Shown piece after piece: positions 1,264-61,944 of a stretch of 64,000 nucleotides of DNA. The number at the start of each line of letters is the position of its first letter. The first letter of the stretch is position 1. The position numbers and the translations under genes were made by a program. The notes beneath the pieces are model-generated. The model saw nothing but the letters and a program-made list of their open reading frames with translations, had not been told where the DNA came from and did no database searches. The DNA lies in IMG/VR virus record IMGVR_UViG_3300028608_000006, positions 124,001-188,000 of that record; one strand, given 5' to 3'.

Positions 1264-1319
1264 GCAAGCATAAATAAGGGTATATAAGGAGCCTGAGGAT
1301 AGTCCCCAAGCTCCTTATA
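1264..1319 (-). terminator. Hairpin with downstream TTATGCTTGC tail
   Basis: Arms tataaggagc (1283-1292) and gctccttata (1310-1319); on the minus strand the hairpin is followed by CCCTTATTTATGCTTGC. Confidence 0.7.
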
Positions 1320-1321
1320 CT

Positions 1322-1657
1322 TCAGTGCAGTGTACGTGTAGTCGGTGCGCTGATAAACGACTCAGCTGACCCGATGATTCCACCCACCGTAATAACAGTA
1401 GGTCGGTCGAACATCAGGTGTAAATCTAAATGCCACAGGAAACTCCACATCACCGCTGTGTTGTTTGCTTCGTGTTCCATGATCTCAGCGGCGAAACGGT
1501 GTACGGTGGGATGCAACATCATGGACAGCTTCGGAGCCTCGCGAGCATGCCCCATGAGGACATCCATACAAGTCTTGTCAACTACCACTTCATCGGGTGT
1601 TAAATCGAACGCATGCAGAAAACTGCGGTACGTCCAAATCAATTGTTCTTTGTTCAT
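1322..1657 (-). CDS. Degenerate (likely catalytically dead) paralogue of the adjacent nucleotidyltransferase, 111 aa
   Basis: Start moved to MNKEQ (ATG 1657, SD AAGGGG). Aligns without gaps to 1761..2198 over about 55 aa and shares DLH, but the GG and DxD motifs are replaced. Confidence 0.7.
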   Translation of the reverse strand: MNKEQLIWTYRSFLHAFDLTPDEVVVDKTCMDVLMGHAREAPKLSMMLHPTVHRFAAEIMEHEANNTAVMWSFLWHLDLHLMFDRPTVITVGGIIGSAESFISAPTTRTLH

Positions 1658-1760
1658 GCAGTCACCCCTTAGAAGGGTATCCGGTCTGTGGGCGGAGAGT
1701 TCCATTACGATGGTCAACCCAGTCATCAATAACGGTGTAATGGAACCCCACCCCAGAACC

Positions 1761-3014: not shown

Positions 3015-3031
3015 GTAATATAGGTTTCAAA
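3015..3031 (-). promoter_or_regulatory. phiKZ-type early (virion RNAP) promoter
   Basis: Minus strand TTTGA-AACC-TATATTAC matches the phiKZ early consensus (TATATTAC core with upstream TTTaA) and faces a small-gene operon. Confidence 0.75.
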
Positions 3032-5500: not shown

Positions 5501-5553
5501 GATATGGATTCTTTATGAAAAGTCTCAATGGTCTACAGAATGAGGCAGGGAGT

Positions 5554-6558
5554 ATGAACTTAATCAACCATCTGGGTGTCGGCACCGTTGCCAGTACCAA
5601 GCAGACCAACACCGATGAAATCATGGTGTACCTGCCTAGCATGGCACCCGCAGCTGATGGCCGTGTGGTTGCGACTGCTAAGCAGGTCGAGAAGAAAAGC
5701 GAGAACGCGTACGGGGAGGAGACTACTAGCCGTGTACTGACGTCCAACACCTTCCCCGCTAAGTGGCGTTCCATGGGGGATAGCAACCGGATCACCCCAC
5801 CGGATGTTCGTGAAGGCAGTCAGGTTTCGATCTACCAAGTGAGCGGTCAGAACACTTACTACTGGACCACGTTCGGTATCAACGCCGAGACCATGCGTCT
5901 GGAAACGGTGATCATGGGTTATTCGGCTAACCCACAACAGTCCGATGACACACCTTTCAATATCGACAACTTCTACACCATGACGGTCTCTACTCACGAG
6001 GGCTTTGCTGCGTTCCGCACGACGCAAGCCAATGGCGAGAAGGCAGCCTTCGAAATCAAGGTCGATGGCAAGAACGGCAAGGTCATGGTGGGCGGCAGTG
6101 CCGGTAACTTCCTCGTTAAAGACGACGTCGCGCACTCGCTGACTTATGTGAACGCTGACGGCAGCATCTTTAACATCGACAAGAAGAAGATGAACGTCTA
6201 CGTTAAAGACTCCATCACGTTCAACGCCGACGAAGCATTTAACATCCTGACGAAGGTGTTTAACCTGAAATGCGAAAGTATTAACATTCAGGCTGATACT
6301 GCTGACATCCGTATCGGTGAAACGACATGGACGGGCAACATTACCCAGAAGGGTAACTACACCCAAGACGGTGACTTCGATCAAACCGGGGATTACACCC
6401 AGACCGGTGATTACGACCAGACGGGTAACATTACTTCTTCTGGTACAATTCACGCTGCCATCGATGTAACATCCTTGGTCAGTTTGAATTTGCACATCAC
6501 TACTGGCGTCAGAGGTGGTCCAGATCTCTCCGGTCCTCCAATGCCTACAGGCGGTTAA
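5554..6558 (+). CDS. Baseplate central spike / tail-tip beta-helix protein (phiKZ gp164-like)
   Basis: Start moved to ATG 5554 (SD GGGAG). OB-fold-like N-terminus (PPDVREGSQVSIY), 6-residue beta-helix repeats, and an apex-like C-terminus SLNLHITTGVRGGPDLSGPP. Confidence 0.8.
   Translation: MNLINHLGVGTVASTKQTNTDEIMVYLPSMAPAADGRVVATAKQVEKKSENAYGEETTSRVLTSNTFPAKWRSMGDSNRITPPDVREGSQVSIYQVSGQNTYYWTTFGINAETMRLETVIMGYSANPQQSDDTPFNIDNFYTMTVSTHEGFAAFRTTQANGEKAAFEIKVDGKNGKVMVGGSAGNFLVKDDVAHSLTYVNADGSIFNIDKKKMNVYVKDSITFNADEAFNILTKVFNLKCESINIQADTADIRIGETTWTGNITQKGNYTQDGDFDQTGDYTQTGDYDQTGNITSSGTIHAAIDVTSLVSLNLHITTGVRGGPDLSGPPMPTGG
6343..6432 (+). repeat. Five 18-nt / 6-aa beta-helix repeats in the spike
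   Basis: TQKGNY TQDGDF DQTGDY TQTGDY DQTGNI. Confidence 0.85.
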
Positions 6559-6566
6559 TAACCTTA

Positions 6567-6615
6567 CTACTACCCAACCCCATTACGGAGGTTGGGTAGT
6601 AGGGGTTATGTTTGC
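6567..6615. terminator. Hairpin between convergent genes with a TTATGTTTGC tail on +
   Basis: 13-bp arms ctactacccaacc (6567-6579) and ggttgggtagtag (6590-6602), then TTATGTTTGC at 6606-6615. Confidence 0.8.
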
Positions 6616-9501
6616 TTAGAACACGTCGCGTTGGGTAAAGAACTGGTTAGGTCCGTTAGCACCATCGTCAGTGAAGCAAGGGATCGCTGTACCACGACGA
6701 GACGCACTAACAACGTGGTTACTCATCACCAGGTAATCCTTGCTTTGTTGCAGAACACCGTTGACCGCAATACCGAACATCACTTCGTTGTTTGCCACCT
6801 CACGACGAACCGAGGAAGCAACTACTTGAAGTACGTCACCCAAACGGATCAGGTAGCAGTATACCGTCCCGACTGTCCCGACCTTAAGCGCCAGCTCTTG
6901 ACCAATGAGGAACGCTTTACCGCCCAGCATGACACGGCCACCCGAAGGAAGACGAATCCAGCCAGCTTCATTGATGTTGAACTGATCGATCGAGGTCACC
7001 CCGTTGACTTCCAACATTCTGCACGTTAGCGCGGTGTTGGTAGGGTCGTACTGGTAGATACCCTTGTTAGGGATCTGGAGTGACGGGAGGAGTTCTTCCA
7101 CCAAATCGATCTGAGCCGTGCCCGCATACAGCCGAACAGGGTTAAGCTTGTTGGGGGCAAACACCGGGAAGGTGGATGTCTCGAAGCCTGTCACCGTGAA
7201 ACTCACATCACCGTAGTTGTCGCCGAAAGGACGAGTCGCCACGATGTTGAAGTTGTTCGGTGTAACCGATGCGATCTGCAAGTCAGCAAAGTTCATCCAG
7301 ACGTTATCACCCGAACCCGACTCACGGTTACCCGCAGCAACGGGACCGCTGGCCAACGTGATAGGTGTCAGTGCTACACCGTTGGTAGGCTTGAAGTCCA
7401 GCGTGATGATGTTGTTCGTCACCGCATAACGTGCCGATGCCGCTTCTGCATAGCTCACGCCATCAGAGATGATGACAATCACTTTGTTCAGCGACACTGC
7501 GAAGATCTGAATCTCAACCTTCCGCAACGAGTCCAACACACCCGGGTTCAACACTTTAGCCCGGTCCATCACGCCACGAGACACACCTTGAAGGCTGAGC
7601 ATGCTCGAGATGGCCACAGTAACGTCAGCCCCTACGCTCAATACCCCGTTCACGTAACTGATGCTGGCTTTGCCGATGTGGTTGTTGGTCCCCGTAAACG
7701 CCAGACCATTCATCCCCACGCCCACCGACGACTTGTACACAGCATTCACAACCGACTTCGGGAAAACCCCGAGGTTGGAGACTGGGCTGCTAACTTCCGG
7801 CAAACGAACGCCGAACACACCGTCACCCGTCTGAGTACTGATGATGGACGTATCGTTCCATGTCAGTCGAGACCACCCGAACAACCCTGTGGAAGGATTG
7901 AGACCGTAGACCAGATACTGCGTTTCCGCCGCGGTATGCAACACCGGGATGATACGCTCTGGCAATGGACCGAACGGACTATGACGACTTGGAGCAAACA
8001 CTTCAGTAGAAGCATCCGCCGGGTTGATCACCGGACGTTTAGCCGTCATCCAATCTTTCACACCCTCGTACTCGGTGCGGTAGCGCTTAACCCGCAGAGC
8101 CAACTTGGTGCTTCGTGCTTTAACGATCAACCCCGAGTTCAACACCGCGCCAGGAGACTGGGTAATGTTGTTCAAGTCAAATGGGTTGTTAACGGTAAAG
8201 TAGTCAGAGTCCACTACCGGTAACAGTTCAGCGTCCAAAGTATCCTTGACACGAGTGCCGAGGGTTTTGAAGATTGCCGAACCACCCGATCTCAATGTTC
8301 CCGGAGTGATGGACTCGGTAAACGACAGCACCAGCTTACTGGTCTTCGCGCCTTGTGTTACAATCAATGCAACACTGACATTCAGGTAAGCTTCGAAGTC
8401 AACCGCATTCCACACCAAGGTGGTGATCACATCAGGGCGAGATGGATCCGCCGCAATGGTAGCGCCAGCCGGCAGCGTGATGAAGTCAGTCAGGTTGTAG
8501 CTGTGAGACCCGTTAGCAGGTCCGGCCGACAACGTGTTACTGATACGATCGAACTGAGCGGTGTATGCGTTGGTGATGGTCTCCGTCAGACTAGGCGCTG
8601 TGTCAGCCGCGTTCGCATGGAAGAAACGGTGATTGATAGTAATGACACCACCTGCCAACGATGCCGTGATTCCCAGACCCTTATAAAGGGCGCTGTTGAA
8701 GTTGTTGTACAGCAGGTAGTTACGGTTACCCGCTGGCAACGGCAGAGTGGTGGCGAAGTTGTAGATCCTCCGATCGCCCAATGGACGGAAGAAAGCCACC
8801 TTACCGTCAACTGTATCCCCGCCTGTCATGTTCCAGTTGGTCCCAACGTAGCGAGAAACCAAGTTGGTGATTTCGCTAAGACGAGCACGGGACAAACCTT
8901 TCAGTGGCAACCCCACAAACATGAGCTGTTTGCTGTAGTACGGGTTATCCGACTGAGGGGAGTAAATCAAACGATCCCCGTTGATCAGAATTGGGACACG
9001 ACCGTTGGACACCAAGAAACGACTTGGTTCCGGTGTAGCCGGAGGAGTCGTCTCGTAGTCGTCCGGGTAGTAGTACGACGCGAACTGGAATACACCATTA
9101 CGCTGATACAGGTCCAAATCGAACTCACCGGTGTTAGCGTCCAGCGCGGCTTTGGCCCCAGCAGGCGTTACAAAGGCGTTCACGTTGGCGTAGCTAGAAG
9201 CCTCAGCCGGTGTGGCGGGTCGGAAGTTATCCTTCTTACTGAGCCCCACAGTGGCTTTGGTTTCGCCGTGCACCGCACCCCGTTTAGCGATGTGGGTGTC
9301 GATCGGAGTAACCGTGGCATTAATGAACGCCGTTACATGGGTGTCCAGTGCCGCGATCTTTTCTGCCACGTTCTTGTTGAACTGGGTTTGCCGATCCTCT
9401 TTCTCAACCGCCATCTCGTTGAGCTTCTGGATCACTGACCCGAAGGCCGGTTCCGGCACCTCTACGAAAGGAGGTTCTGCTATAGGCCTGACAATAATCA
9501 T
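6616..9501 (-). CDS. Large tail/baseplate-associated virion protein (tail paralogue family)
   Basis: Likely start MIIVRP (ATG 9501, SD GGAG). Has the HGETKATVGLSKKDNF fibre-type motif and a C-terminal module (EAGWIRL...) shared with the two neighbouring paralogues. Confidence 0.7.
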   Translation of the reverse strand: MIIVRPIAEPPFVEVPEPAFGSVIQKLNEMAVEKEDRQTQFNKNVAEKIAALDTHVTAFINATVTPIDTHIAKRGAVHGETKATVGLSKKDNFRPATPAEASSYANVNAFVTPAGAKAALDANTGEFDLDLYQRNGVFQFASYYYPDDYETTPPATPEPSRFLVSNGRVPILINGDRLIYSPQSDNPYYSKQLMFVGLPLKGLSRARLSEITNLVSRYVGTNWNMTGGDTVDGKVAFFRPLGDRRIYNFATTLPLPAGNRNYLLYNNFNSALYKGLGITASLAGGVITINHRFFHANAADTAPSLTETITNAYTAQFDRISNTLSAGPANGSHSYNLTDFITLPAGATIAADPSRPDVITTLVWNAVDFEAYLNVSVALIVTQGAKTSKLVLSFTESITPGTLRSGGSAIFKTLGTRVKDTLDAELLPVVDSDYFTVNNPFDLNNITQSPGAVLNSGLIVKARSTKLALRVKRYRTEYEGVKDWMTAKRPVINPADASTEVFAPSRHSPFGPLPERIIPVLHTAAETQYLVYGLNPSTGLFGWSRLTWNDTSIISTQTGDGVFGVRLPEVSSPVSNLGVFPKSVVNAVYKSSVGVGMNGLAFTGTNNHIGKASISYVNGVLSVGADVTVAISSMLSLQGVSRGVMDRAKVLNPGVLDSLRKVEIQIFAVSLNKVIVIISDGVSYAEAASARYAVTNNIITLDFKPTNGVALTPITLASGPVAAGNRESGSGDNVWMNFADLQIASVTPNNFNIVATRPFGDNYGDVSFTVTGFETSTFPVFAPNKLNPVRLYAGTAQIDLVEELLPSLQIPNKGIYQYDPTNTALTCRMLEVNGVTSIDQFNINEAGWIRLPSGGRVMLGGKAFLIGQELALKVGTVGTVYCYLIRLGDVLQVVASSVRREVANNEVMFGIAVNGVLQQSKDYLVMSNHVVSASRRGTAIPCFTDDGANGPNQFFTQRDVF

Positions 9502-19661: not shown

Positions 19662-19726
19662 GCGACATAACACCCTTACCCCTACGGAGCCCATAGAGGC
19701 GTCCGTAGGGGTAAGGGGTATGTTTG
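19662..19726. terminator. Bidirectional hairpin between convergent spanin and holin-candidate genes
   Basis: 16-bp arms cccttacccctacgga (19673-19688) and tccgtaggggtaaggg (19702-19717); GTATGTTTGC follows on + and TTATGTCGC follows on -. Confidence 0.85.
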
Positions 19727-19739
19727 CTTGTCCAGCCTT

Positions 19740-25095: not shown

Positions 25096-25116
25096 AATTT
25101 ACTCATGAGGTTTACG

Positions 25117-28209: not shown

Positions 28210-28256
28210 ATACTACTCTACCAGCCTAGGCTGGTAGAGTAGTATATTTATGTTTG
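28210..28256. terminator. Perfect 36-bp palindrome plus TTATGTTTG tail, between convergent genes
   Basis: atactactctaccagcct|aggctggtagagtagtat (28210-28245), then TTATGTTTG at 28248-28256. Confidence 0.8.
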
Positions 28257-31860: not shown

Positions 31861-31898
31861 GCAAACATAATCCACCGGGGTTGCCCTCGGTGGATTAT
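31861..31898 (-). terminator. Hairpin plus TTATGTTTGC tail
   Basis: Arms ataatccaccg (31867-31877) and cggtggattat (31888-31898); + strand GCAAACATAA at 31861-31870. Confidence 0.8.
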
Positions 31899-34262: not shown

Positions 34263-35915
34263 TTATTCACGTCGCTTCAGCCTGTTCGCTGTCAATTCAT
34301 ATAACTCTTTGAACTCAGGAGCGAGTCCGGTTATTTTGTCATTGATCAGGTGCAGGCATGGCGTCAGATACCCTCGTCCGTCTGGATACGGGTTAGTCAC
34401 CCGCAGGTAACTGTTTACGAAGGGCAAGGAAGGGTGGGTGAAACACGCGCTGTCAGTGGTATCGAAATCGCCGCGTTTCTTCTTGTTACCTACCCCAGTA
34501 TAGACCTTGTGCTGTGGCATGCACCCTAACACATAATCGATAAAGGGATTATCTGTCGGTGTCGGTTCCTGAATGAGATTGGTCGTTCGAGCATTGTCAA
34601 TCTCCTTAATGTGAAAGTTGTTGTTGAGGAACCGGGACACTTTCTTCTGGCTGAGTTCCGAGTTGTTCTTGATGTCGTGTTTGAAACTGTTGGCGGCTGT
34701 AATCAGCTTGTCCAACGTGAATTCCAAACTCGCCAGCTCTTTGTAGAGCATGGACGCACGATCGGTTGTTTGAACGATCTCACTGCGGTTGGCAATGATG
34801 TAGTTAAACAAGTCGAACATGTTCGCCACCACGATGGACTGGGACGCGAATTTCTTGATCGAGTCTTCGTCCAGGTACTCGTTGATCGAGTCAAAGTGCT
34901 CATGCATGAGTCGCATGATGTACTCATTACTGTCACCCGCTTTCACGGAGCAGCGACCGATGATCAACTTCCAGTAGTCCGGGCTGTCAATGCTGTCAAT
35001 ATCAAAGTACGAGGAAAGACAATCGATGACAAACAACAACGCCCCGGCGTACTGCAACGCCATAGAGCTCAGCTCTTTACGCTTATCGGATTTGTTCCGT
35101 ACCGCCACGGCATAGTCGTGGCCTACGAAGTCACCCAGAGAACGCGAGTTAGGCGAACTGGAACGGGTGATGATTTCCCAACGGTCTTGCGGTTTGCATT
35201 CCGCAATCAAAGCATCCGTTGGTCCGATCTCAAAGTCACACTCGCCGTACTGCTGCATTGCGCGAGTGAACCCCATATCCGCAAAGATATACCAGGCTAA
35301 CAAAGGCGTAGGGGTTTTGGTATCCTTGATCTTCCGGGCTTCCGTCGGCGAGTAGAACCGATTGGCAGCCAGGTTGATGTCGGCGGTTCGTGTCAAGTTG
35401 CTACCGGTCTCTGAGAACACTTGGTCGTACTTAAAGTGTTCCACACCGATCTTGAACTTGAACCCCAAGACTTTAACGAAGAGCGAGTTTTCCTTAGTGA
35501 CCGGTAACCCACGTTCAGCTAACACAAATTGCAGGCTATAATGCACACCACGCAACCAGAGGTCGCCATGCTTGTCGCAATACGGCAACATGACATACAC
35601 TGGGTTCAACGCGATAATCTTGCCGGCCTTGTCCTTGTATTCGAACATGATCTTGCAAGGGTACAACGTCTCCTTGTGAATGTCGAAGATCTTGCTACTC
35701 GACTTGATGAGGTAATCGATGTACTCACGCGGCGGTACTCGAAAGACGCCACGGAAGAACACCCCACGCTTTTCAATGCTCTTGAAAATCAATCGAAGTG
35801 AATGGTCAAAGTAGTGCAGACCTTTTTCGAATTCCTTTTGATGAAAACCGTCAACAATTACCTGATTGAATTTCGGCATTGTTGCTTCAATAGGTCCAAT
35901 TAACCTTGGATGCAT
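34263..35915 (-). CDS. Non-virion RNA polymerase beta subunit, N-terminal part (phiKZ gp123-like)
   Basis: 550 aa. NLIQEPTPTDNP and CFTHPS...PYPDGRGYLTP resemble RpoB region D (SQFMDQNNP; DVHPSH...TPEG.N.GL). Lies downstream of the capsid gene as in phiKZ. Confidence 0.85.
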   Translation of the reverse strand: MHPRLIGPIEATMPKFNQVIVDGFHQKEFEKGLHYFDHSLRLIFKSIEKRGVFFRGVFRVPPREYIDYLIKSSSKIFDIHKETLYPCKIMFEYKDKAGKIIALNPVYVMLPYCDKHGDLWLRGVHYSLQFVLAERGLPVTKENSLFVKVLGFKFKIGVEHFKYDQVFSETGSNLTRTADINLAANRFYSPTEARKIKDTKTPTPLLAWYIFADMGFTRAMQQYGECDFEIGPTDALIAECKPQDRWEIITRSSSPNSRSLGDFVGHDYAVAVRNKSDKRKELSSMALQYAGALLFVIDCLSSYFDIDSIDSPDYWKLIIGRCSVKAGDSNEYIMRLMHEHFDSINEYLDEDSIKKFASQSIVVANMFDLFNYIIANRSEIVQTTDRASMLYKELASLEFTLDKLITAANSFKHDIKNNSELSQKKVSRFLNNNFHIKEIDNARTTNLIQEPTPTDNPFIDYVLGCMPQHKVYTGVGNKKKRGDFDTTDSACFTHPSLPFVNSYLRVTNPYPDGRGYLTPCLHLINDKITGLAPEFKELYELTANRLKRRE

Positions 35916-35927
35916 CGTGACTCCAAA

Positions 35928-37064: not shown

Positions 37065-37077
37065 AGGAGGCCTCCTA
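37064..37077 (-). promoter_or_regulatory. SD/anti-SD palindrome covering the RBS and the A of the start codon
   Basis: Minus strand TAGGAGG-CCTCCTA-TG. Confidence 0.6.
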
Positions 37078-37104
37078 GAAACATTAATATTGCGTTCTAA
37101 TTCA

Positions 37105-37121
37105 ATAATGTAGGTTTCAAA
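37105..37121 (-). promoter_or_regulatory. phiKZ-type early promoter heading the nvRNAP operon
   Basis: Minus strand TTTGAAACCTACATTAT, 15/17 identical to the promoter at 3015-3031. Confidence 0.7.
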
Positions 37122-37147
37122 GATTCCAATGGAAACAAAGAGAAGGC

Positions 37148-37193
37148 GGACATAATAAAAACCCCTCAGCACCCGAAGGCACTGAGGGGTTTT
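37148..37193 (-). terminator. Major capsid gene terminator (UUCG loop)
   Basis: Minus strand AAAACCCCTCAGTGCC-TTCG-GGTGCTGAGGGGTTTT-TATTATGTCC. Confidence 0.9.
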
Positions 37194-37279
37194 CGTGCTT
37201 ACTCAACTAAGCCCAACTTTTCACCGGACACTAACAGCAAGTATTCAGCCTACTGTTAGTTGGCCGTAGTCAGTCGGGC

Positions 37280-39472: not shown

Positions 39473-39488
39473 GGATTAAAGTCCTGTG

Positions 39489-39540
39489 AGTTGAGCTTTT
39501 TAAACAAATATATTTGTTTGCGCAAGTTGAGCTGCACATA
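39489..39540 (-). promoter_or_regulatory. Capsid gene leader: TATG, two 9-bp direct repeats and an 18-bp palindrome
   Basis: agttgagct at 39489-39497 and 39525-39533 flank aaacaaata|tatttgttt (39502-39519); minus-strand TATG at 39540-39537. Confidence 0.5.
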
Positions 39541-39555
39541 AAATATGTAAGAGTG

Positions 39556-40101: not shown

Positions 40102-40124
40102 CTTTAGCTCCCGGGGAGTTTTGA

Positions 40125-41657: not shown

Positions 41658-41711
41658 AAACAGTAAACTTTTAATACAGTAACTATTGGTATTAAACTGA
41701 CCACCTAAATT

Positions 41712-41760
41712 CCCTCTCTCCAGGTTCATTCCTGGGAGAGGGTAAAAGGTTTATGTTTGC
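41712..41760 (+). terminator. Hairpin plus TTATGTTTGC tail after dnaB
   Basis: Arms ccctctctccagg and cctgggagaggg; TTATGTTTGC at 41751-41760. Confidence 0.8.
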
Positions 41761-41930
41761 CTGTCAGCTATTTACAGGGCTGCGACGCTCTACAATGCGA
41801 TTACAGACGTTTTGAGAATACTCTCCTCTCCTTGTCTGGATTACTTCATTTAAATGCTTTAACGAGGTTTTGGAGTGAAGGATCCTATAGGCGTGCTTTT
41901 ATTCGGGAAGGCTTTAAAGAGGGTATTGAC

Positions 41931-42815: not shown

Positions 42816-42868
42816 TCCACTCTTTTACTTTTCTTGGTAACCGGTTGCCCAGGCAACACAACGAATAA

Positions 42869-42905
42869 GGCATACTCTCCTACTCCGCTAAGGAGTAGGA
42901 GAGTA
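42869..42905. terminator. Bidirectional hairpin between the Kelch gene and the structural operon
   Basis: 14-bp arms tactctcctactcc and ggagtaggagagta; minus strand continues as TATGCC. Confidence 0.75.
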
Positions 42906-43010
42906 CTTGTTAAGAAAAGCTTAAATAGAGGTGTCACTGCCTCCCCTGCTTTCGCAAGAGCCCTTCCTTCACGGTTGTATAAACATAGCCTCCTAGACAG
43001 GAAAATATAT

Positions 43011-44351: not shown

Positions 44352-44354
44352 GAC

Positions 44355-47880: not shown

Positions 47881-47910
47881 GTCGAATACTCGTTGTACGA
47901 ATGAACAAAT

Positions 47911-47953
47911 CCGGTATGGAAGGGGCCACCCTCCATACCGGCATTATGCCTGC
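47911..47953. terminator. Hairpin with a TTATGCCTGC tail on the + (antisense) side
   Basis: Arms ccggtatgga (47911-47920) and tccataccgg (47932-47941); TTATGCCTGC at 47944-47953. Confidence 0.6.
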
Positions 47954-48682
47954 TTAACCGGCTTTGTCTTTATCACTGGCATCGAGAAGGCGATAGCGTA
48001 CGAACCACAGACGATCATCGGGAGTCCTGAAGACAGCGAGATCGGAAACCCCGTCGTTCATCAGGTCAACCACTTCGGCTTCCAGCATGTCCGCCACCGA
48101 AGGAGCGCACTCGATCGTGTGGTGAATCAGCTCAGCGGCCAAAGATTGAACGAAGCCCTTTCCCAGACCACCACCGCCAACCACGATCACGTCGTAAGCC
48201 GGGAAGACCTTGCTGACCAAAGCCAGTTGAGCCTTCTGTTCACCCAACGAGCAGCACACGGCGATCTTCGGACGATCGAACTTGGCCTTGTCCTTCACGG
48301 TGATGGCGAGAGAGCCTTTAACGTGGATGGACGTCTCGAGGATGTAAACCCCGGAAGAGAGTGTCCCCTCAACACCGAACCGCACAGTACCCTCATCGGC
48401 CTCGTAATCAACGCCAGGGGTCAGATACAAACGGTACTTAGCGGAAACAGCCGCCATCACGTCTTCCCAGCTGTCGCCTTCGCTTGCCATGACTTCAGCA
48501 CGCTGACCAGACAGGTAACGAGTGACGTCAACCTTTGGCATGGTAACCCGTTTGGTTTCCTCACCGATCTGGACAACGAAGACTGCCTTCTCTGGAGACT
48601 CAGCAGCGCCGGACTGAATGACCGCGCCAACCGGCAAACTTGCAAGCACAAGTTCCAGCACGCGAGGATTAACGTTACTCAT
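47954..48682 (-). CDS. Putative virion protein
   Basis: 242 aa; central motif SAKYRLYLTPGVDY...SIHVKGSLAITV. Confidence 0.6.
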   Translation of the reverse strand: MSNVNPRVLELVLASLPVGAVIQSGAAESPEKAVFVVQIGEETKRVTMPKVDVTRYLSGQRAEVMASEGDSWEDVMAAVSAKYRLYLTPGVDYEADEGTVRFGVEGTLSSGVYILETSIHVKGSLAITVKDKAKFDRPKIAVCCSLGEQKAQLALVSKVFPAYDVIVVGGGGLGKGFVQSLAAELIHHTIECAPSVADMLEAEVVDLMNDGVSDLAVFRTPDDRLWFVRYRLLDASDKDKAG

Positions 48683-51693: not shown

Positions 51694-51735
51694 GCAGACA
51701 TAAGGCTATCGCCCGGGATTGCCCCGGGCGATAGC
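51694..51735 (-). terminator. Hairpin plus TTATGTCTGC tail
   Basis: 13-bp arms gctatcgcccggg and cccgggcgatagc; + strand GCAGACATAA at 51694-51703. Confidence 0.8.
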
Positions 51736-51766
51736 ACTCATTTACGTCGTGCGCTAACCGCGAGGG

Positions 51767-53014
51767 TTAGACGTGAGCTGCAACGGCGTCCAGGGTCCAG
51801 CCGGCGCTACGGATCACTTGCTTGTTGACGGCCTGAGCGATCGACGACGAAGTCGCGAACACGGAACGTACAACCTGGATCTGAGCGTTGACTTCTTCAG
51901 CCTTTTCCTTGTCGTCCGCTTTCAGGACGTTCAGGGAGCCGATGACCTGGTCACGCTGCGACTTCGAGAAGGCAGCTGCGACTTTGTCGTTGCGGATGGC
52001 GGTAACGGTTGCTTTGACTTTGCCCAGGGCAGCAGTCAGAGCGCCTTTGTCAGCCTTGGCAGCAACTTCGCCGCTGGTCAGCTTGGAGGTGTCGCCGGTG
52101 CCGAAGAAGATCTTGATCGAGCGAGCCATTTCAGCTGCTTCTTTCAGATCTTTCGCCAGGCCGTCTTTCATCTCGGCGTGAACGCGAACGCCAGCCGACA
52201 TGCCGATCAGGGTCTTCTTGTCGCCTTCGCTCTTCTCGCCGGCGTTCACGTCGGACTTGGCGTCCTTCTTGAGTGCGGCCAGCAGGGAAGCGTAAGCGCT
52301 GTTGAAGGACGACAGATCGACCTTGGCAGCCGACTTGGCGATACCAGCGAAAGTAGCCAGGGCGCCTTTGGTGGCAGTCCAGCCTTCAGGGTCTTTGTTC
52401 AGACCGCCTTTCTCGTAGTCGAACAGGACGTTCCAGCCGCCCAGCTTGATCTTTTCCTTGACCTTCTCGGCCGCGGTGACGCGAGTGACCAGTTGGTCAT
52501 GGCGACGGCTCAGCTTTTCAGCGGCGTTGAACAGGCCGACGAAGAAGTTGATCACGGTGTTGAAGATGTGCTTGATGACTTCGATGGCTTTCTTGGCGTA
52601 ACCTTTCACGGTTTCCATGAAGCCTTCCATGCCGCTGCGAGCCATGATCTGAGCGGTGGCCGCATCGGACATGGATTCAACGCCGCAACGCTCGATGGAA
52701 GCGCCGCCCAGCTTGGTGTTCAGCTTGGCCGCACGGTTGTACATGCTGGCGAAAGCGGTGGAGTTGAACTGGCCGGAGCTGATCAGGCATTCGAGGCCTT
52801 CAACCACTTCCTGGATTTCTTCGACGGCTTCGTCCTGCTGCTTGACTTCTTCACGCAGCTCTTCGATTTCCTGGCCTTGTTGCTCCAGGACTACCTGAAC
52901 TTCGGCGACTTCAGCGCGAACCGAATCTTCAGCACCGGCTTCGATAACTACGTTGTCGGCAGCGCCGCCCATTTCCAGTTCTTCGAAACCCTTGTAGCGA
53001 TCAAGAATGTTCAT
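51767..53014 (-). CDS. Abundant internal head protein (phiKZ gp93-97 family-like)
   Basis: Glu-rich coiled-coil propeptide, sites EGLE, CGVE and SGME|GFMETVKGYAKKAIEVIKHIFN; strong codon bias and its own terminator. Confidence 0.8.
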   Translation of the reverse strand: MNILDRYKGFEELEMGGAADNVVIEAGAEDSVRAEVAEVQVVLEQQGQEIEELREEVKQQDEAVEEIQEVVEGLECLISSGQFNSTAFASMYNRAAKLNTKLGGASIERCGVESMSDAATAQIMARSGMEGFMETVKGYAKKAIEVIKHIFNTVINFFVGLFNAAEKLSRRHDQLVTRVTAAEKVKEKIKLGGWNVLFDYEKGGLNKDPEGWTATKGALATFAGIAKSAAKVDLSSFNSAYASLLAALKKDAKSDVNAGEKSEGDKKTLIGMSAGVRVHAEMKDGLAKDLKEAAEMARSIKIFFGTGDTSKLTSGEVAAKADKGALTAALGKVKATVTAIRNDKVAAAFSKSQRDQVIGSLNVLKADDKEKAEEVNAQIQVVRSVFATSSSIAQAVNKQVIRSAGWTLDAVAAHV

Positions 53015-57896: not shown

Positions 57897-58970
57897 ATGG
57901 CTGATAGCCCAAGTTCTAATGAGGGATGGTTTGACGGGACACCAGGAAACGAGAAACCTACTGTCGCGCTTGATTCACATAGCGTCCCCGAATACCTAGA
58001 TTATGCGTTCAGAGAAAATGGTGGACCTGGTTACCAGAGTGCGTTGGTTAACATGCTCCGAGGCATCAGAATTCTCGGTCCAGGGAACCAGCTAGCGCCC
58101 ATCCCCGACGACACCATAGGATTAGCGTTTGTTAGCCGTCCGATGTTGAACCTGTCTGACGAAAACGTCATTAAACACCCGCAGTTGGCTCCTTTGTACA
58201 AGCCTCAGAAAAACACGCTGATGGCTTACATTAAAGGTTTGCTGGATCCGACGTGGGGACGTGGTAACAGTGGGCTCACCGACATCCTTGATCCGTTGTA
58301 TCCCTGGATCCCACCGTGCTCCAACTTCCTCAAGGTTAGCTCGGGCTTTCCTGACCTGCAATTGACCATGGGTAAGTCGACTCCTGGTTTCCGTAAAGAA
58401 GTTTACCAGTACGTGAACAGCGTGCTTAAAGTGAACTACGATTACGACATGCGTCAGTCCTACCACACGTCCAAGCCTAGCGTGCTTCCTTATATGTTTG
58501 AAGCTTGGGTCCACTACATCGAAGCGGTGAAGTTGGGCGATGAAGGGATGGAGCCTTATCCCGAGGCATTGATCGAGAACTACGTCGATTACGACTGCCG
58601 CATCTACCACATGATCTTGAACAAGGACATGCGGAGTATCGAGTGGTTGTTCTGTAGCGGTAGTTCCGTGCCTACGACGTTCCCATCGGGTGCCTTCAGT
58701 ACCATCGACCGGACACAGAATACGTTGCGTGGTCAAGGGCAGGATGAGCTGGAGATTAACTTCTCCTCCGTGGGATTCCGTTTCGGTAACATTCAAATTG
58801 CCGACATGTTCAACCGCACCACCGTCAAGTTCAACCCAGGTATGTTGCCTGCGGTGCGTGAGCAAAATTACCGTCTGTTGTCCATGTCCGAGTATTTCTC
58901 TGGTGGGTATGAAGTGTACCCGTGGATCAACATTGACACCATGAAGTTAGAATACTGGAGTCGGCTCTAA
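57897..58970 (+). CDS. Tail/baseplate protein (phiKZ gp88-like by synteny; tube-initiator-type)
   Basis: 357 aa, SD AAGGA; beta-rich C-terminal part resembles tube-fold proteins. Confidence 0.55.
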   Translation: MADSPSSNEGWFDGTPGNEKPTVALDSHSVPEYLDYAFRENGGPGYQSALVNMLRGIRILGPGNQLAPIPDDTIGLAFVSRPMLNLSDENVIKHPQLAPLYKPQKNTLMAYIKGLLDPTWGRGNSGLTDILDPLYPWIPPCSNFLKVSSGFPDLQLTMGKSTPGFRKEVYQYVNSVLKVNYDYDMRQSYHTSKPSVLPYMFEAWVHYIEAVKLGDEGMEPYPEALIENYVDYDCRIYHMILNKDMRSIEWLFCSGSSVPTTFPSGAFSTIDRTQNTLRGQGQDELEINFSSVGFRFGNIQIADMFNRTTVKFNPGMLPAVREQNYRLLSMSEYFSGGYEVYPWINIDTMKLEYWSRL

Positions 58971-61897
58971 TGGCTATGTCCCAAGATGACCTGGAACGGT
59001 TGGCGAATAACCCACAGCGTGGGATCAACCTGATCATTGACGAAGTCGAACGCAACTGGTTTAACGGCACCGTCAAGCTGAACAGCAAAGCTCACCCCGC
59101 TGTACTCTGCATGGACCTGATCCTGGGTACCTCGCATGGCTTCCTGAACCGTTTGAGTGATGCCACCAGTAAGGTGGCCTTGAAGCACGCTCGTAACGTC
59201 AGCGACCTCAGCCGCAACATGGGTGACGACGAACGCTTTGGTCTGTTCGCCATGCCGTCGGAATCCACCATGCAGTGGGCGATCTCCGAAGATGCTTTCA
59301 AAGAGATCTCGAAAGAAGTCACGGTCGTTCAGGGTAAGACCACCTTTACCTACCAAGCGATCCTGATTCCTAAGGACTCGACCTTCGACGTTAACGGTTA
59401 TTCCTTTGCTGTTAACAACGGTGTTGAAATCCGCTGGAGTGAGAAGGCTGGTTGGCAGGCTGTGTACGACGAGCAGACCAATAACCCGTTCCAACCGATC
59501 GGCACTAACCTGATCGACAAGGACAAGAAGATTGTTAACGGTACGGTTTACCGACTGTTCAACATTCCGGTGACTCAGCTGGCTATTAAGTCGGTCGAGA
59601 ACATCACGTCCAACGAAGGCTCGGGTTGCCGCGGCACTGTTGAGTATCCGGACTACCTGTTCGGTGTGCGTGCGTTCTTGGTCAAGGACAACGTCCTGAA
59701 GGAGATTGCGGTCAGTTACGATCAGGATGTATTCGATCCACTGACGGTGACGCTGGCGCTGGACATCGACACAGTGAACAACCTGTTCAACTACGAGATC
59801 CCGGACGTCTACATCACCAACAAGCTGGGTACGGGCTCCATTCGCATTTACGCTTACACCACCAAAGGGGAACTGACCAAGAACCTCACCCTGACCCCTT
59901 CGCAGGTGATCATCCCGAACTACCAGGACTTCCGTTACGGTGCAGGTAAGCTGGGTGATACCTCGGCCATGCTGCGTAACGCCAAGGGTGCTGCGTGGGC
60001 CATGACCACGGTTACCACTGGTGGTAGCAACCCGATCCCGTTCAACCAGATGAAGCAAGCCCTCATCGATGATCGTCGTCAACGTAACACCCCGATTACT
60101 CAGAGCAACCTGAAAGGCAAGGTTGAGAACTACGGTTACGGTTCTGTGAAGACCATCGACTACCTGACCGGTCGCGCATACTCCCTGAGCAAGGAACTCC
60201 CTATTCAGGACAACAAGGGCTTCTACGCTCCGATGTCTTGCTACGTGGGCAGTCACTTGGCTTCGGCGAACGATCTGGTGGGCGCAGGTGTGGTGCTGGA
60301 CAACGGTAAGCGCATTACCATCCCGCACAACGTCTTGTTCGATATCACCTCGCCTACGTCTAAGTTGGTTAACCAAATCAACAAAGATCGCTACTTGGGG
60401 ATGTCGAGTGAACAGCTGGTTGACTTGACCGCTGATAGCACTCTGGTCTACACGCCGTTCTACTACGTGCTGGACATGACCAACAACCAAGCTGTGCTGC
60501 GCACTTATCACCTTGATGCACCGGTGGTTCGTAACCAGACCTTCGTGGCGGAGAACTCTACCCTGGGCTTTGAACTGGGTGTGGGTTCGATTGCGATTGA
60601 CCACATCGACACGGGTTACCTGATCACAGTCGTGACCAAGTCTAACGATGCGTATAAACAGCTGGACAACAACCAGCTGGGTCTGCAACTGTCGATCAAC
60701 CCACAAGACTCCAGTAGCCTGGCCAGTATTGCGGGTGTGTTGGTGGGCGTGACTGAAGACAACGAACGTATTTGGGAATTCCGTATGGAGACCAAGTTCG
60801 ATGTGGACGTCAACGATATCATCTACTTCACCAACCTGCATCAGTTCGGTACGGTTCAGCCAAGCACTGGCTCGACACTGGCCATCGACATGACCTTCAT
60901 CTTCTGCTTCGTAGGGGACATGGAGTTCAGTAAGTCGGACTCTGATGCGAAGATCGATCAAACCATCTTCCCTGAAGACATGGTGGCGATCATCGAAACC
61001 AGCTACGGTATTACCTTCGGGAAACTGATGGGTAACCTGTACAGCCGGATTCGTCCGTTGGTGGGTGAGGCGCAGTACCTGCGTTACGCGGCTGACGTTC
61101 CTGAGACTTATCAGGACAACAAGCTGAAGCGTGAGAACGGTGAGTTGGTGTTCGATCCTGAAACTGGACTGCCTATCCTGGAGCACAAGATCGGGGATGT
61201 GGTGTACAACGACAATGGCACCCCTCGTCTATTGTACCGCGCTGGCGTGGACGTGGTGGTGGATGCACAAGGCAAGCCGGTTGAGGTAGCGCCTCGTGAC
61301 TTGAAGTACCATTGGGACTTCATTGCTTTCGACGGTAACTACTTCTTCTCTGACGACCCGTATGACATCCAGTTTGCTCTGGATACGAAGAACTACTTCG
61401 TTAACGTCATCACCAAAGACATGGAAGCCTTTACCTCGGAAGCGCTGGACCGTACTGACTTGTTCTACCAGCCGCGCAGTAAGCTGGGGTACCAAAAGGT
61501 TGTGGTCAACAGCAACTACGAGTCGTTCCTCAAGCAGGACCTGGAATTCACCATTACGTATTACCTGACGGCCGCTGGTTATCGCAACCAGAACCTGAAG
61601 GATGCGTTGACCGACAGCACGCCACGGGTTATCAACATGGCGCTGTACGGGGCTACCACAATCGCTATCACCAGTTTCGTTACCAGTCTGATGCAGGATG
61701 CTGGCGACCAAGTGGTGAGCGTGAAGCTGAGTGCCTTGTCGGGTGACACCACTGTTGACGTTATCAGTAACGCCGACACACTCACTGGCTTCTGCGTTCG
61801 CAAGATGCTGAAGTTGTCGGGTGATGGTGGTGTGGGTGTTAAGGAGGCGATTGACGTCATCTTCTTGCCGCACGATGCCAGTACCGCAAATATCTAA
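58970..61897 (+). CDS. Large baseplate wedge-type protein (phiKZ gp87-like by synteny)
   Basis: 975 aa, coupled by a TAATG overlap. Motif TTGGSNPIPFNQMK...RNTPITQSNL resembles gp6/J-like wedge proteins. Confidence 0.6.
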   Translation: MAMSQDDLERLANNPQRGINLIIDEVERNWFNGTVKLNSKAHPAVLCMDLILGTSHGFLNRLSDATSKVALKHARNVSDLSRNMGDDERFGLFAMPSESTMQWAISEDAFKEISKEVTVVQGKTTFTYQAILIPKDSTFDVNGYSFAVNNGVEIRWSEKAGWQAVYDEQTNNPFQPIGTNLIDKDKKIVNGTVYRLFNIPVTQLAIKSVENITSNEGSGCRGTVEYPDYLFGVRAFLVKDNVLKEIAVSYDQDVFDPLTVTLALDIDTVNNLFNYEIPDVYITNKLGTGSIRIYAYTTKGELTKNLTLTPSQVIIPNYQDFRYGAGKLGDTSAMLRNAKGAAWAMTTVTTGGSNPIPFNQMKQALIDDRRQRNTPITQSNLKGKVENYGYGSVKTIDYLTGRAYSLSKELPIQDNKGFYAPMSCYVGSHLASANDLVGAGVVLDNGKRITIPHNVLFDITSPTSKLVNQINKDRYLGMSSEQLVDLTADSTLVYTPFYYVLDMTNNQAVLRTYHLDAPVVRNQTFVAENSTLGFELGVGSIAIDHIDTGYLITVVTKSNDAYKQLDNNQLGLQLSINPQDSSSLASIAGVLVGVTEDNERIWEFRMETKFDVDVNDIIYFTNLHQFGTVQPSTGSTLAIDMTFIFCFVGDMEFSKSDSDAKIDQTIFPEDMVAIIETSYGITFGKLMGNLYSRIRPLVGEAQYLRYAADVPETYQDNKLKRENGELVFDPETGLPILEHKIGDVVYNDNGTPRLLYRAGVDVVVDAQGKPVEVAPRDLKYHWDFIAFDGNYFFSDDPYDIQFALDTKNYFVNVITKDMEAFTSEALDRTDLFYQPRSKLGYQKVVVNSNYESFLKQDLEFTITYYLTAAGYRNQNLKDALTDSTPRVINMALYGATTIAITSFVTSLMQDAGDQVVSVKLSALSGDTTVDVISNADTLTGFCVRKMLKLSGDGGVGVKEAIDVIFLPHDASTANI

Positions 61898-61899
61898 AG

Positions 61900-61944
61900 G
61901 CAAACATAACCCCTACCCCAGCCAGCAACGGCGGGGTAGGGGTT
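61900..61944. terminator. Hairpin between convergent genes with a TTATGTTTGC tail on -
   Basis: 12-bp arms aacccctacccc and ggggtaggggtt; + strand GCAAACATAA at 61900-61909. Confidence 0.8.

What the first reader, a model, noticed from the sequence alone, without database searches (positions are those of the whole stretch)
1264..61944. Recurrent hairpin + TTATG(T/C)(T/C)TGC element replacing the poly-U tail
Seen: 10 unrelated GC-rich hairpins are followed within about 10 nt by a TATG-containing tail. The tails are TTATGCTTGC (1264-1273 -), TTATGTTTGC (6606 +, 31861 -, 41751 +, 61900 -), TTATGTTTG (28248 +), TTATGTCTGC (51694 -), TTATGTCC (37148 -), GTATGCC (42869 -), and both GTATGTTTGC (+) and TTATGTCGC (-) at the convergent junction 19662-19726. 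The tail follows the direction of incoming transcription. One further copy (47944 +) faces antisense. Established: TATG is the phiKZ late nvRNAP promoter core. Inference: either the phage RNAP uses a sequence-specific terminator/processing signal, or each element couples termination to re-initiation, which at convergent sites would make antisense RNA.
Basis: partly seen in the sequence, partly recalled or inferred. Interest (0 to 1): 0.62.

Follow-up and report, generated by a model that had tools for sequence, protein, structure and literature searches.

The report
Jumbo-phage terminators with TTATG tail

Summary
All 12 listed sites exist and each follows a strong hairpin (dG -26 to -40 kcal/mol). 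The exact 10-mer occurs 7 times in the window against 0.3 expected.

The window belongs to a 231.8-kb soil-metagenome chimallivirus related to Pseudomonas phage EL. It encodes a homologue of phiKZ GP123 and four further RNAP beta-like subunits.

Across this genome and three relatives, TATG follows 60/213 intergenic hairpins read in the direction of the upstream gene. It follows only 2/89 read antisense (p=1.5e-8).

This is the published phiKZ terminator motif: stem-loop plus TTAT-K-YY-GT, at 61 terminator regions found by ONT-cappable-seq. The local dialect is TTAT-G-YYY-GC.

The re-initiation idea is not supported, for four reasons:
- TATG tails are at least as common at convergent junctions (39/117) as at codirectional ones (21/96).
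- The G varies (G/T/A) at orthologous terminators in relatives.
- Hairpin-less TATGTG boxes upstream of the capsid and sheath genes are conserved in every relative checked.
- Separate CCTAYATTAY promoter-like boxes lie 25-50 nt downstream of several tails.

Verdict: a new member of a known kind, of modest interest. The unexplained overlap between the tail and the late-promoter core remains an open mechanistic question.

The parts
1264..1320 (-). Terminator: hairpin 1320..1282, 8-nt spacer, tail TTATGCTTGC 1273..1264. Codirectional junction after the small gene 1322-1555/1729(-).
   Evidence: dG -28
6558..6615 (+). Terminator of the baseplate-like gene 5515-6558(+): core hairpin 6567-6602 (extended stem 6558-6609), tail TTATGTTTGC 6606-6615. 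Convergent junction. Read on the minus strand, the same hairpin is followed by a TTATT-AACC-GC variant for gene 6616-9501(-).
   Evidence: dG -32
19662..19727 (.). Bidirectional terminator at the convergent junction 19655/19740. One hairpin (19670-19719) carries GTATGTTTGC on + (19718-19727) and TTATGTCGC on - (19670..19662).
   Evidence: dG -39.5 / -40.2
28210..28256 (+). Terminator of the virion structural gene 25117-28194(+): hairpin 28210-28245, tail TTATGTTTG 28248-28256. Convergent junction. The minus-strand reading has a CTAT + T6 tail for gene 28258-28989(-).
   Evidence: dG -27
31861..31898 (-). Terminator after gene 31909-34248(-), the phiKZ gp124-like gene: hairpin 31898..31867 (its AATAA/TTAT ends are paired), tail TTATGTTTGC 31870..31861. 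In the relatives L001, L002 and L026 the stem is entirely different but the flanks and tail are identical.
37146..37194 (-). Major capsid gene terminator: hairpin 37194..37157, tail TTATGTCCGC 37155..37146. A hairpin sits at this syntenic position in nearly all related loci examined. The stems covary: 7 of 13 pairs show compensatory changes.
   Evidence: The metatranscriptome contig stops at 37194.
41712..41760 (+). Terminator after the DnaB-like helicase gene 40125-41657(+): hairpin 41712-41742, 8-nt spacer, tail TTATGTTTGC 41751-41760.
42869..42906 (-). Terminator after gene 43011-44351(-): hairpin 42906..42872, tail GTATGCC 42875..42869 (GTAT is paired into the stem). Convergent junction. 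The plus-strand reading has no TTAT or T-rich tail.
   Evidence: Relatives carry TTATGTTTGC / TTATGTTCGC / TTATGTCTGC at the syntenic hairpin.
47908..47953 (+). Antisense copy: hairpin 47908-47945 with TTATGCCTGC (47944-47953) on the + strand, between two minus-strand genes. The sense (-) reading has an ATTTGTTCAT tail. The copy is conserved in the close relative G001.
51694..51741 (-). Terminator after the internal head protein gene 51767-53014(-): hairpin 51741..51700, tail TTATGTCTGC 51703..51694. Codirectional junction.
   Evidence: dG -33
61900..61946 (-). Bidirectional terminator at the convergent junction 61897/61959: hairpin 61946..61906 with paired ATAA/TTAT ends, minus-strand tail TTATGTTTGC 61909..61900. 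The plus-strand reading gives TTAT-TCAC-GC for gene 58970-61897(+).
   Evidence: dG -34. Near-twin hairpin at genome 93430.
39531..39546 (-). Comparator, not a terminator: a late-promoter-like box containing TTTTATGTGCAGC, with no hairpin, 66 nt upstream of the capsid gene start. TATGTG is kept in all 22 related loci examined, including EL and Erwinia phage RisingSun.
37105..37114 (-). Separate promoter-like box CCTACATTAT, about 40 nt downstream of the capsid terminator tail. It is conserved as AAACCTACA in relatives. Similar boxes lie at 31647-31656(-) and 3015-3024(-).
34263..35915 (-). Homologue of phiKZ GP123, the nvRNAP beta-like subunit that binds the non-template TATG in phiKZ. It shows the phage has its own phiKZ-type RNA polymerase.
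   Evidence: phrog_2943; PDB 7OGP chain E, E=5e-12; PMC12809450

Best explanation
These are the phage's transcription terminators, of the type characteristic of phiKZ-like (nucleus-forming, chimallin-encoding) jumbo phages. Each is a stable GC-rich RNA hairpin, usually with a C-rich 5' arm and a G-rich 3' arm. It is followed at once by a short, interrupted U-tract with fixed non-U positions. Here that tract reads (T)TAT-G-T-Y-Y-G-C; in phiKZ it reads TTAT-K-Y-Y-G-T.

The phage's own split multisubunit RNA polymerases transcribe the hairpin and stall in the tail, and the RNA is released about 7-10 nt after the stem.

At convergent gene pairs one hairpin serves both directions. It then carries ATAA on one side and TTAT on the other, which also lengthens the stem.

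Shown here: the anatomy, the strand specificity, the position at gene 3' ends, conservation of the tail while stems are replaced, and possession of phiKZ-type RNAP genes. Inferred: that RNA 3' ends lie in the tail (from phiKZ and 201phi2-1 mapping) and which polymerase terminates there. The TATG inside the tail is most likely a lineage-specific preference within a TTAT-N core, not a working promoter.
For: Chance and strand specificity.
- 7 exact copies against 0.3 expected.
- In this genome TATG lies within -6..+12 of the stem end in 28/72 strong intergenic hairpins read in the sense of the upstream gene. The figures are 2/21 antisense, 1/88 intragenic and 2.1% background.
- In four whole genomes (this one, G001, G003, EL), TAT-N follows 164/213 sense hairpins against 33/89 antisense and 9/69 intragenic. 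TATG follows 60/213 against 2/89, p=1.5e-8.

Motif.
- The logo of 28 tails is gggT-TATG-T-Y-Y-G-C-T-T.

Conservation.
- Three syntenic hairpin sites recur across most of the 33 related loci (capsid protein identity 57-91%). They have unrelated or covarying stems and a retained YTAT-N-N(2-4)-GC tail. Seven of 13 stem pairs show compensatory changes.

Published precedent.
- A conserved terminator motif shared by 61 phiKZ terminator regions identified by ONT-cappable-seq is a stem-loop followed by TTAT (...YTTATKYYGT) (PMC10914365).
- Motif A of 201phi2-1 (n=59) resembles it (PMC11512511).
- I reproduced TTATGYYGT tails in phiKZ 100-150 kb.

Polymerase.
- The genome encodes a GP123 homologue, four more RNAP beta-like PHROG families and chimallin.

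Weak support.
- A soil metatranscriptome contig covers the capsid gene and stops at the upstream edge of its hairpin (37194). DNA contigs run through that point.
Against: - No 3'-end mapping exists for this uncultured phage. The only RNA evidence is assembled contigs, which cannot show true ends.
- The tail differs from the phiKZ consensus by one extra pyrimidine and by C instead of T at the end.
- One copy (47944+) faces antisense and is conserved in a relative.
- About half of the sense hairpins use other tails: TATT/TATA, poly-T or none. The TATG form is therefore not obligatory.
- 3' ends seen by sequencing in phiKZ could in principle arise by processing rather than termination.
- Gene calls are my own heuristic.
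Confidence: 0.8

Rival explanations
1. Terminator coupled to a late promoter. The TATG of the tail would be a working nvRNAP start site (G = +1), so that polymerase terminates at the hairpin and re-initiates at once. At convergent junctions this would produce antisense RNA.
For: - TATG is the necessary core of phiKZ late promoters, with G as +1 (PMC4666361).
- It is bound in the non-template strand by GP123 (PMC12809450), and a GP123 homologue is encoded here.
- The clade really does use TATG boxes upstream of the capsid and sheath genes.
- 12-16 TATG tails in this genome are followed by a same-strand gene 20-200 nt away.
Against: - TATG tails are not enriched where a downstream gene exists: 39/117 convergent against 21/96 codirectional in four genomes. 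In this genome the split is 17 convergent to 16 codirectional.
- At orthologous terminators the G is replaced by T or A in relatives (T8/G5/A4). The promoter-like TATGTG boxes are conserved in all 22 loci (capsid) and all 4 genomes (sheath).
- Tails read TATG-T-Y, while the promoter-like boxes and phiKZ P119L read TATG-T-R.
- Separate CCTAYATTAY boxes lie 25-50 nt downstream of several tails.
- In phiKZ, TATG is necessary but not sufficient.
Confidence: 0.1
2. RNA processing or stability element. The hairpin would be a 3' protective structure, and the single-stranded AU-rich tail an endonuclease (RNase E-type) cleavage site. The observed 3' ends would then be processed ends rather than termination products.
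For: - The tail is single-stranded and U/A-rich and follows a stable hairpin.
- From my own knowledge (not tested here), G-U|U-U in the tail loosely fits the RN|WUU preference reported for enterobacterial RNase E.
- Sequencing of 3' ends does not separate termination from processing.
Against: - In half of the window sites TTAT is base-paired into the stem, so it is not single-stranded.
- Symmetric bidirectional use at convergent junctions fits termination better.
- ARNold classified the phiKZ sites as intrinsic terminators.
- Cloned 201phi2-1 terminators block read-through in a two-reporter trap.
- From my own knowledge, phiKZ encodes an RNase E inhibitor (Dip).
Confidence: 0.07
3. Ordinary bacterial-type intrinsic terminators aimed at the host RNA polymerase. 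The TTATG would be no more than compositional drift of a U-tract.
For: - The tail is U-rich (6 of the first 8 nt).
- ARNold accepts the phiKZ versions.
- 201phi2-1 terminators work to varying degrees with host RNAP in vivo.
Against: - The non-U positions (A3, G5, G9, C10) are conserved far beyond U-richness.
- Tail dialects are lineage-specific, for example TTATGGCTGC six times in G003.
- Classical hairpin+T-run sites are not enriched in the window.
- phiKZ development is independent of host RNAP, and this phage carries the same polymerase set.
Confidence: 0.03

Closest known systems
phiKZ conserved intrinsic terminator motif (Putzeys et al. 2024, microLife, PMC10914365) and motif A of 201phi2-1 terminators (PMC11512511)
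   Same: - A GC-rich stem-loop with a C-rich 5' arm and a G-rich 3' arm, followed immediately by TTAT, then G/T, pyrimidines and a G.
- It sits at gene 3' ends and is bidirectional at convergent pairs.
- The phage transcribes with its own split multisubunit RNAPs.
- I reproduced TTATGYYGT tails in phiKZ itself.
   Different: - The tail here is TTAT-G-YYY-GC: one extra pyrimidine, and C rather than T after the distal G.
- The stems are longer and more varied (13-19 bp against about 7-8 bp in phiKZ).
- The host genome is 52% GC rather than 37%.
- The phage belongs to the EL lineage, whose members each have their own tail dialect.
- No RNA-end mapping exists here.
Canonical bacterial intrinsic (Rho-independent) terminators, including bidirectional ones
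   Same: - A hairpin followed by a U-rich stretch.
- An A-rich 5' flank pairing with the U-rich 3' flank at bidirectional sites.
   Different: - The U-tract is interrupted at fixed positions (A3, G5, G9, C10).
- Most sites fail a simple 5-T-in-8 rule.
- The enzyme is presumably a highly divergent phage RNAP, not the host enzyme.
phiKZ late promoter core T(-3)A(-2)T(-1)G(+1), recognised by the nvRNAP subunit GP123
   Same: - The same four letters, usually preceded by T and followed by T.
- The clade has genuine conserved TATGTG boxes upstream of the capsid and sheath genes.
   Different: - The tail G is not conserved across relatives.
- The tails are preceded by a hairpin and followed by Y rather than R at +3.
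- Half of them face a converging gene.
T7 RNA polymerase class II (sequence-specific, hairpin-independent) pause/termination signal (recalled from my own knowledge, not tested)
   Same: A phage RNAP responding to a short specific sequence plus a U-run.
   Different: - T7 RNAP is a single-subunit enzyme.
- The class II signal needs no hairpin, whereas here the hairpin is always present.

Membership tests
phiKZ-type terminator motif (stem-loop + TTATKYYGT) | Stable GC-rich stem-loop with a C-rich 5' arm and a G-rich 3' arm | tested here: met
   All 12 window sites fold at dG -26 to -40. At convergent junctions the 5' arms hold 247 C to 62 G and the 3' arms 57 C to 259 G. The bias is weaker at codirectional junctions.
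phiKZ-type terminator motif (stem-loop + TTATKYYGT) | TTAT directly after, or paired into the base of, the stem | tested here: met
   TAT-N follows 33/44 sense hairpins here and 164/213 in four genomes, against 33/89 antisense. TATG most often starts 0-1 nt after the last G:C pair.
phiKZ-type terminator motif (stem-loop + TTATKYYGT) | Exact tail K-Y-Y-G-T after TTAT | tested here: inconclusive
   The local consensus is G-T-Y-Y-G-C: one extra pyrimidine, and C for T. It is the same pattern of a G, a pyrimidine run and a G, so I treat it as a dialect. Relatives show further dialects.
phiKZ-type terminator motif (stem-loop + TTATKYYGT) | Located downstream of genes, in their orientation, and bidirectional at convergent pairs | tested here: met
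phiKZ-type terminator motif (stem-loop + TTATKYYGT) | Coincides with mapped RNA 3' ends | not testable with these tools
   Only assembled metatranscriptome contigs exist. One ends at the capsid-gene hairpin, which is consistent but not proof.
phiKZ-type terminator motif (stem-loop + TTATKYYGT) | The phage encodes phiKZ-like virion and non-virion multisubunit RNAPs | tested here: met
   GP123 homologue. phrog_3148, 2986, 3015 and 2987, all 'RNA polymerase beta subunit', plus chimallin. Which subunits belong to which enzyme was not resolved.
Canonical bacterial intrinsic terminator | Uninterrupted or near-uninterrupted U-tract (at least 5 T in 8) right after the stem | tested here: not met
   In 28000-47999 the scan finds 16 sites against 19.7 in shuffles. 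It catches 28245(+) and part of the 37148 hairpin through a shorter alternative stem, but misses the 31861, 41751 and 42869 sites.
phiKZ late promoter (TATG, G=+1) | TATG core present | tested here: met
phiKZ late promoter (TATG, G=+1) | Core kept under selection: all four positions are needed in phiKZ | tested here: not met
   At orthologous terminators the G becomes T or A. The capsid and sheath upstream TATGTG boxes are conserved in every relative checked.
phiKZ late promoter (TATG, G=+1) | A downstream gene on the same strand to be transcribed | tested here: not met
   17 of 33 TATG-tail terminators in this genome face a converging gene. The four-genome figures are 39/117 convergent against 21/96 codirectional.
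phiKZ late promoter (TATG, G=+1) | Primary 5' ends map to the G | not testable with these tools
   There are no raw RNA reads for this phage. The supplementary TSS/TTS tables of the phiKZ and 201phi2-1 studies are not held.

The most novel reading that the evidence does not exclude
The terminator tail may deliberately mimic the late-promoter initiation core (T-TATG-T). [quoted passage not shown] That would anchor or pause the elongating enzyme just as the hairpin emerges. This would explain termination without a proper U-tract, and it might leave the enzyme poised on DNA. It would be a core-enzyme analogue of sigma-dependent pausing at -10-like elements. The conserved distal Y-G, 8-9 nt after the stem, would mark the pause or release position, in the manner of the Y(-1)G(+1) of the bacterial elemental pause.
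Probability: 0.12. Interest if true: 0.7.

Novelty: new member of a known kind. Interest (0 to 1): 0.3.

Why it matters
For annotation: the hairpin+TTAT-N(3-4)-G(C/T) signature marks operon ends in uncultured chimalliviruses. Together with the conserved TATGTG and CCTAYATTAY boxes, it gives a usable transcription map from sequence alone.

For mechanism: the tail is conserved across phages whose capsid proteins are only 57-60% identical, it drifts into lineage-specific dialects, and it shares its core with the late promoter. That makes it a natural substrate for asking how these sigma-less, split RNA polymerases pause and terminate, which has not been studied biochemically in the literature I could search.

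The finding itself extends a published phiKZ observation rather than revealing a new kind of element.

Tried and rejected
- Megablast of 12 kb against GenBank phages gave no match. The relationship to EL came only from a protein-level search.
- Chance or composition: rejected.
- ATG of the motif as a start codon: rejected. It is out of frame at 1264, and there is no ORF at the convergent sites.
- Tail class against early-operon context, to test whether TATG tails are specific to nvRNAP-transcribed genes. I used the CCTATATTAC early-promoter-like box as the marker and found no association: 8/14 against 25/67, p=0.23.
- A general late-promoter logo from 148 hairpin-less intergenic TATG sites in four genomes showed no extended consensus. 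Only the capsid and sheath boxes stand out.
- Checking the GP123 pocket residues against phiKZ: I did not pursue this. The alignment is only about 20% identical and too unreliable.
- RNA evidence: one soil metatranscriptome holds only assembled contigs over the capsid gene, which is weak. The stretch I laid was 6,001 bases, one over the operators' advised 6,000.
- Supplementary TSS/TTS tables of the phiKZ and 201phi2-1 papers, and the Ceyssens 2014 paper, are not held. I could therefore not compute the overlap of late TSSs with terminators in phiKZ.
- Rfam and tRNA scans of the window found nothing.
- No large protein search, structure prediction or complex prediction was needed.

Full report
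WHAT THE WINDOW IS. The window is bases 124001-188000 of a single 231,788-bp contig with 52% GC. The DNA occurs in soil, rhizosphere, wetland and digester metagenomes, and there is no cultured isolate. Megablast finds nothing among GenBank phages. At the protein level the nearest cultured relatives are Pseudomonas phage EL and its kin, at about 42% identity for one gene and 58% for the capsid protein.

The window carries a phiKZ-type major head protein (37280-39472, minus strand), internal head proteins (Pfam phiKZ_IP), baseplate and virion proteins, and a DnaB-like helicase. It also carries, at 34263-35915(-), a homologue of phiKZ GP123, the beta-like subunit of the non-virion RNA polymerase (PDB 7OGP chain E, E=5e-12). 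Gene order around the capsid gene matches phiKZ gp118-gp124. Elsewhere the genome encodes four more RNAP beta-like PHROG families, the nuclear-shell protein chimallin and an EL-style GroEL. This is therefore a nucleus-forming jumbo phage that very probably transcribes with its own split multisubunit polymerases, as phiKZ does (PMC4666361).

TTATGYYTGC occurs 7 times in the window, at exactly the stated places, against 0.30 expected; no shuffle of 100 reaches 7. There are 11 copies genome-wide. The looser copies are also present. Each of the 12 sites is preceded by a strong hairpin: the 59 nt ending at TTAT fold at -26 to -40 kcal/mol. In half of the sites TTAT is itself paired with an upstream ATAA at the base of the stem. 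Elsewhere the gap is 0-8 nt.

With my own codon-usage gene calls (checked against PHROG hits), 11 of the 12 tails follow the 3' end of a gene on the same strand. Five of the junctions are convergent, at 6558/6616, 19655/19740, 28194/28258, 42815/43011 and 61897/61959. The 47944(+) copy is antisense.

Two corrections to the wording. First, the stems are unrelated within the window, but some have near-twins elsewhere in the genome and many share a C-rich 5' arm and a G-rich 3' arm. Second, the tail is an interrupted U-tract (6 U in the first 8 nt) rather than something wholly unlike a U-tail. A strict hairpin+T-run scan nevertheless misses most of these sites and is not enriched over shuffles.

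IT IS STRAND-SPECIFIC AND TIED TO GENE ENDS. I folded the whole genome in sliding windows and classified strong hairpins (dG <= -18). TATG lies within -6..+12 nt of the stem end as follows:
- 16/32 hairpins at convergent junctions
- 12/40 at codirectional junctions, read in the sense of the upstream gene
- 2/21 when the same kind of hairpin is read antisense
- 1/88 inside genes
- 2.1% of random windows

The sense-versus-intragenic comparison gives p=1e-10. The 28 aligned tails give the logo gggT-TATG-T-Y-Y-G-C-T-T. With a slightly wider net, 33 of 81 sense terminator-like hairpins carry TATG, 17 carry TATT or TATA, 15 carry poly-T and 16 carry none of these.

IT IS CONSERVED IN RELATIVES WHILE THE STEMS CHANGE. 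The capsid protein recovered 33 related IMG/VR loci at 57-91% identity, including EL (L022) and Erwinia phage RisingSun (L033). Three syntenic terminators flank the capsid region in most of them.

Downstream of the capsid gene a strong hairpin (-25 to -40 kcal/mol) follows in 29 of the 30 loci scanned; in EL it was picked up by a second scan. The stems are unrelated or covarying, and the tails read TTATGTTTGC, TTATGTTCGC, TTATGCTGC, TTATGGCTGC, TTATAGCGC and TTATATTTGC (EL). The more distant loci have plain T-runs. In a subset with alignable stems, 7 of 13 pairs show compensatory double changes.

At the 31861 site the close relatives have a completely different stem between identical flanks...AATAA and TTATGTTTGCTTGACC....

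I then ran the whole pipeline on four complete genomes: this one, G001, G003 and EL. Results:
- TAT-N follows 164/213 sense hairpins, 33/89 antisense and 9/69 intragenic.
- TATG follows 60/213 sense against 2/89 antisense, p=1.5e-8.
- The letter after TAT is lineage-dependent: G18/T9/A6 here, G15/T15/A7 in G001, A16/G13/T13 in G003 and T23/G14/A10/C4 in EL.
- Favourite 10-mers differ. G003 has TTATGGCTGC six times and TTATAGCTGC three times.
- Exact TTATGYYTGC occurs 11 times here, 6 in G001, 4 in G002, 0 in G003, once in EL and twice in RisingSun.

The conserved core is therefore hairpin + TTAT + 3-4 nt + (T)G(C). TTATGYYTGC is this lineage's dialect.

IT IS ALREADY KNOWN IN phiKZ. Putzeys et al. 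2024 located 133 phiKZ termination regions by ONT-cappable-seq. [quoted passage not shown] The 201phi2-1 study found a resembling motif at 59 terminators and showed that cloned terminators stop read-through in a reporter trap (PMC11512511). In 50 kb of phiKZ I see TTATGYYGT-type tails after about 15 of 23 hairpins, including the capsid terminator. The element in this window is the same device, with one extra pyrimidine and a terminal C.

IS THE TATG ALSO A PROMOTER? The premise is sound. TATG with G=+1 is necessary, though not sufficient, for phiKZ late transcription (PMC4666361), and it is read in the non-template strand by GP123 (PMC12809450). The EL clade also uses such boxes. Upstream of the capsid gene, all 22 distinct relatives keep ATTT-TATG-TG(Y)AG with no hairpin (window 39531-39546, minus strand). 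Upstream of the tail-sheath gene, all four genomes keep AACATGT-TATG-TG.

Four results argue against the terminator tails working this way:
(i) TATG tails are no more frequent where a downstream gene could use them. They occur at 33% of convergent against 22% of codirectional junctions.
(ii) The G is freely replaced at orthologous terminators, but is never replaced at the promoter-like boxes in any relative checked.
(iii) Tails continue T-Y, whereas the promoter-like boxes and phiKZ P119L continue T-R.
(iv) Several codirectional tails are followed 25-50 nt later by a separate conserved box, (TTTAACTTACA...)AAACCTAYATTAY. This resembles the phiKZ early-promoter TATATTAC element and is conserved in relatives.

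Tail type also shows no association with putative early operons. Re-initiation cannot be excluded without 5'-end data, but I put it at about 0.1.

MECHANISM. The best-supported reading (0.8) is factor-independent termination of the phage polymerases at a hairpin plus a short interrupted U-tract, bidirectional where ATAA and TTAT flank the stem.

The rest is inference. The conserved pyrimidine-G, 8-9 nt after the stem, together with the G-rich 3' arm about 10 nt upstream, resembles the G(-10)Y(-1)G(+1) elemental pause of bacterial RNAP. That resemblance rests on my own knowledge and is untested for these enzymes. It could fix the release point.

The most novel reading that is not excluded (about 0.12) is that the non-template TTATG is caught by the promoter pocket of the GP123-like subunit during elongation, giving a promoter-mimic pause. 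The variable G in relatives, and the presence of TATG tails at the ends of putative early operons, argue against this.

Processing rather than termination (0.07) and host-RNAP terminators (0.03) are less likely, for the reasons given under rival explanations.

THE ANTISENSE COPY. The copy at 47944(+) is unexplained. It is conserved in G001. One untested guess: the plus-strand operon 40125-42815 ends at a hairpin that has no tail in the plus direction. The 47944 element could then be a backstop for antisense read-through.

VERDICT. This is a new member (a lineage dialect) of a known kind. Interest is modest.

Noticed in passing
window 39531-39546 (-), with a palindrome at 39504-39517: A hairpin-less box ATATTTTATGTGCAGC lies 66 nt upstream of the capsid gene start. 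Its TATGTG core is kept in all 22 related loci, including EL and Erwinia RisingSun. It is followed by a conserved 14-nt palindrome (ACAAATATATTTGT) in the 5' UTR. It is probably the late promoter plus a UTR element. A similar AACATGTTATGTGCCAG box precedes the tail-sheath gene in four genomes.
   Followed up: partly
window 3015-3024 (-), 31647-31656 (-), 37105-37114 (-); about 13-25 copies genome-wide: A bipartite promoter-like family, TTTAACTTACA-N(12-15)-TTCAAACCTA(T/C)ATTA(C/T). Nearly all copies are on the minus strand, upstream of genes, and often 25-50 nt after a terminator. It resembles the phiKZ early-promoter TATATTAC element. The AAACCTACA version is conserved downstream of the capsid terminator in relatives.
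   Followed up: partly
window 37130-37182: In a wetland-metagenome strain (run X4), these 53 nt, which include the 3' half of the capsid terminator and its tail, are replaced by 831 other letters. This is an insertion or replacement exactly at the terminator.
   Followed up: no
window 42888-42891: A 98.7%-identical strain (run X2) differs by a 1-nt deletion and a 1-nt insertion. Both lie in or at the edge of the loop of the 42872-42906 hairpin and leave the stem intact.
   Followed up: no
genome C1:1-130 and C1:231660-231788 (outside the window): Both contig ends carry the same stretch (TATATTACTTGTGGGATAACCAATTAAGGT...). This points to an assembly overlap of a circularly permuted or terminally redundant genome.
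   Followed up: no
window 25095-25117 and 40101-40125: Divergent gene pairs are separated by only about 10-23 nt. In phiKZ the helicase/gp119 pair is separated by 211 nt that hold promoter P119L. Here, promoters for these divergent late genes must lie inside the neighbouring coding sequence.
   Followed up: no
genome C1:190130-190139 (-) (window coordinate 66130, outside): A TTATGCCTGC copy with no strong hairpin lies at a divergent junction, 25 nt upstream of a TATATTA box. It is conserved in G001. It could be a degenerate terminator or a real promoter-type use of the motif.
   Followed up: partly
genome C1:94386-96089 (-) and 221235-223250 (-) (outside the window): A phage-encoded GroEL-like chaperonin (phrog_5725), as in phage EL, and a chimallin nuclear-shell protein (phrog_4795). 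These place the phage among EL-like chimalliviruses.
   Followed up: no
window 37397-39541 (+): A 714-codon open frame lies antisense to the capsid gene. It is a shadow ORF of a codon-biased gene, not a gene. Long antisense ORFs of this kind are common in the window.
   Followed up: no
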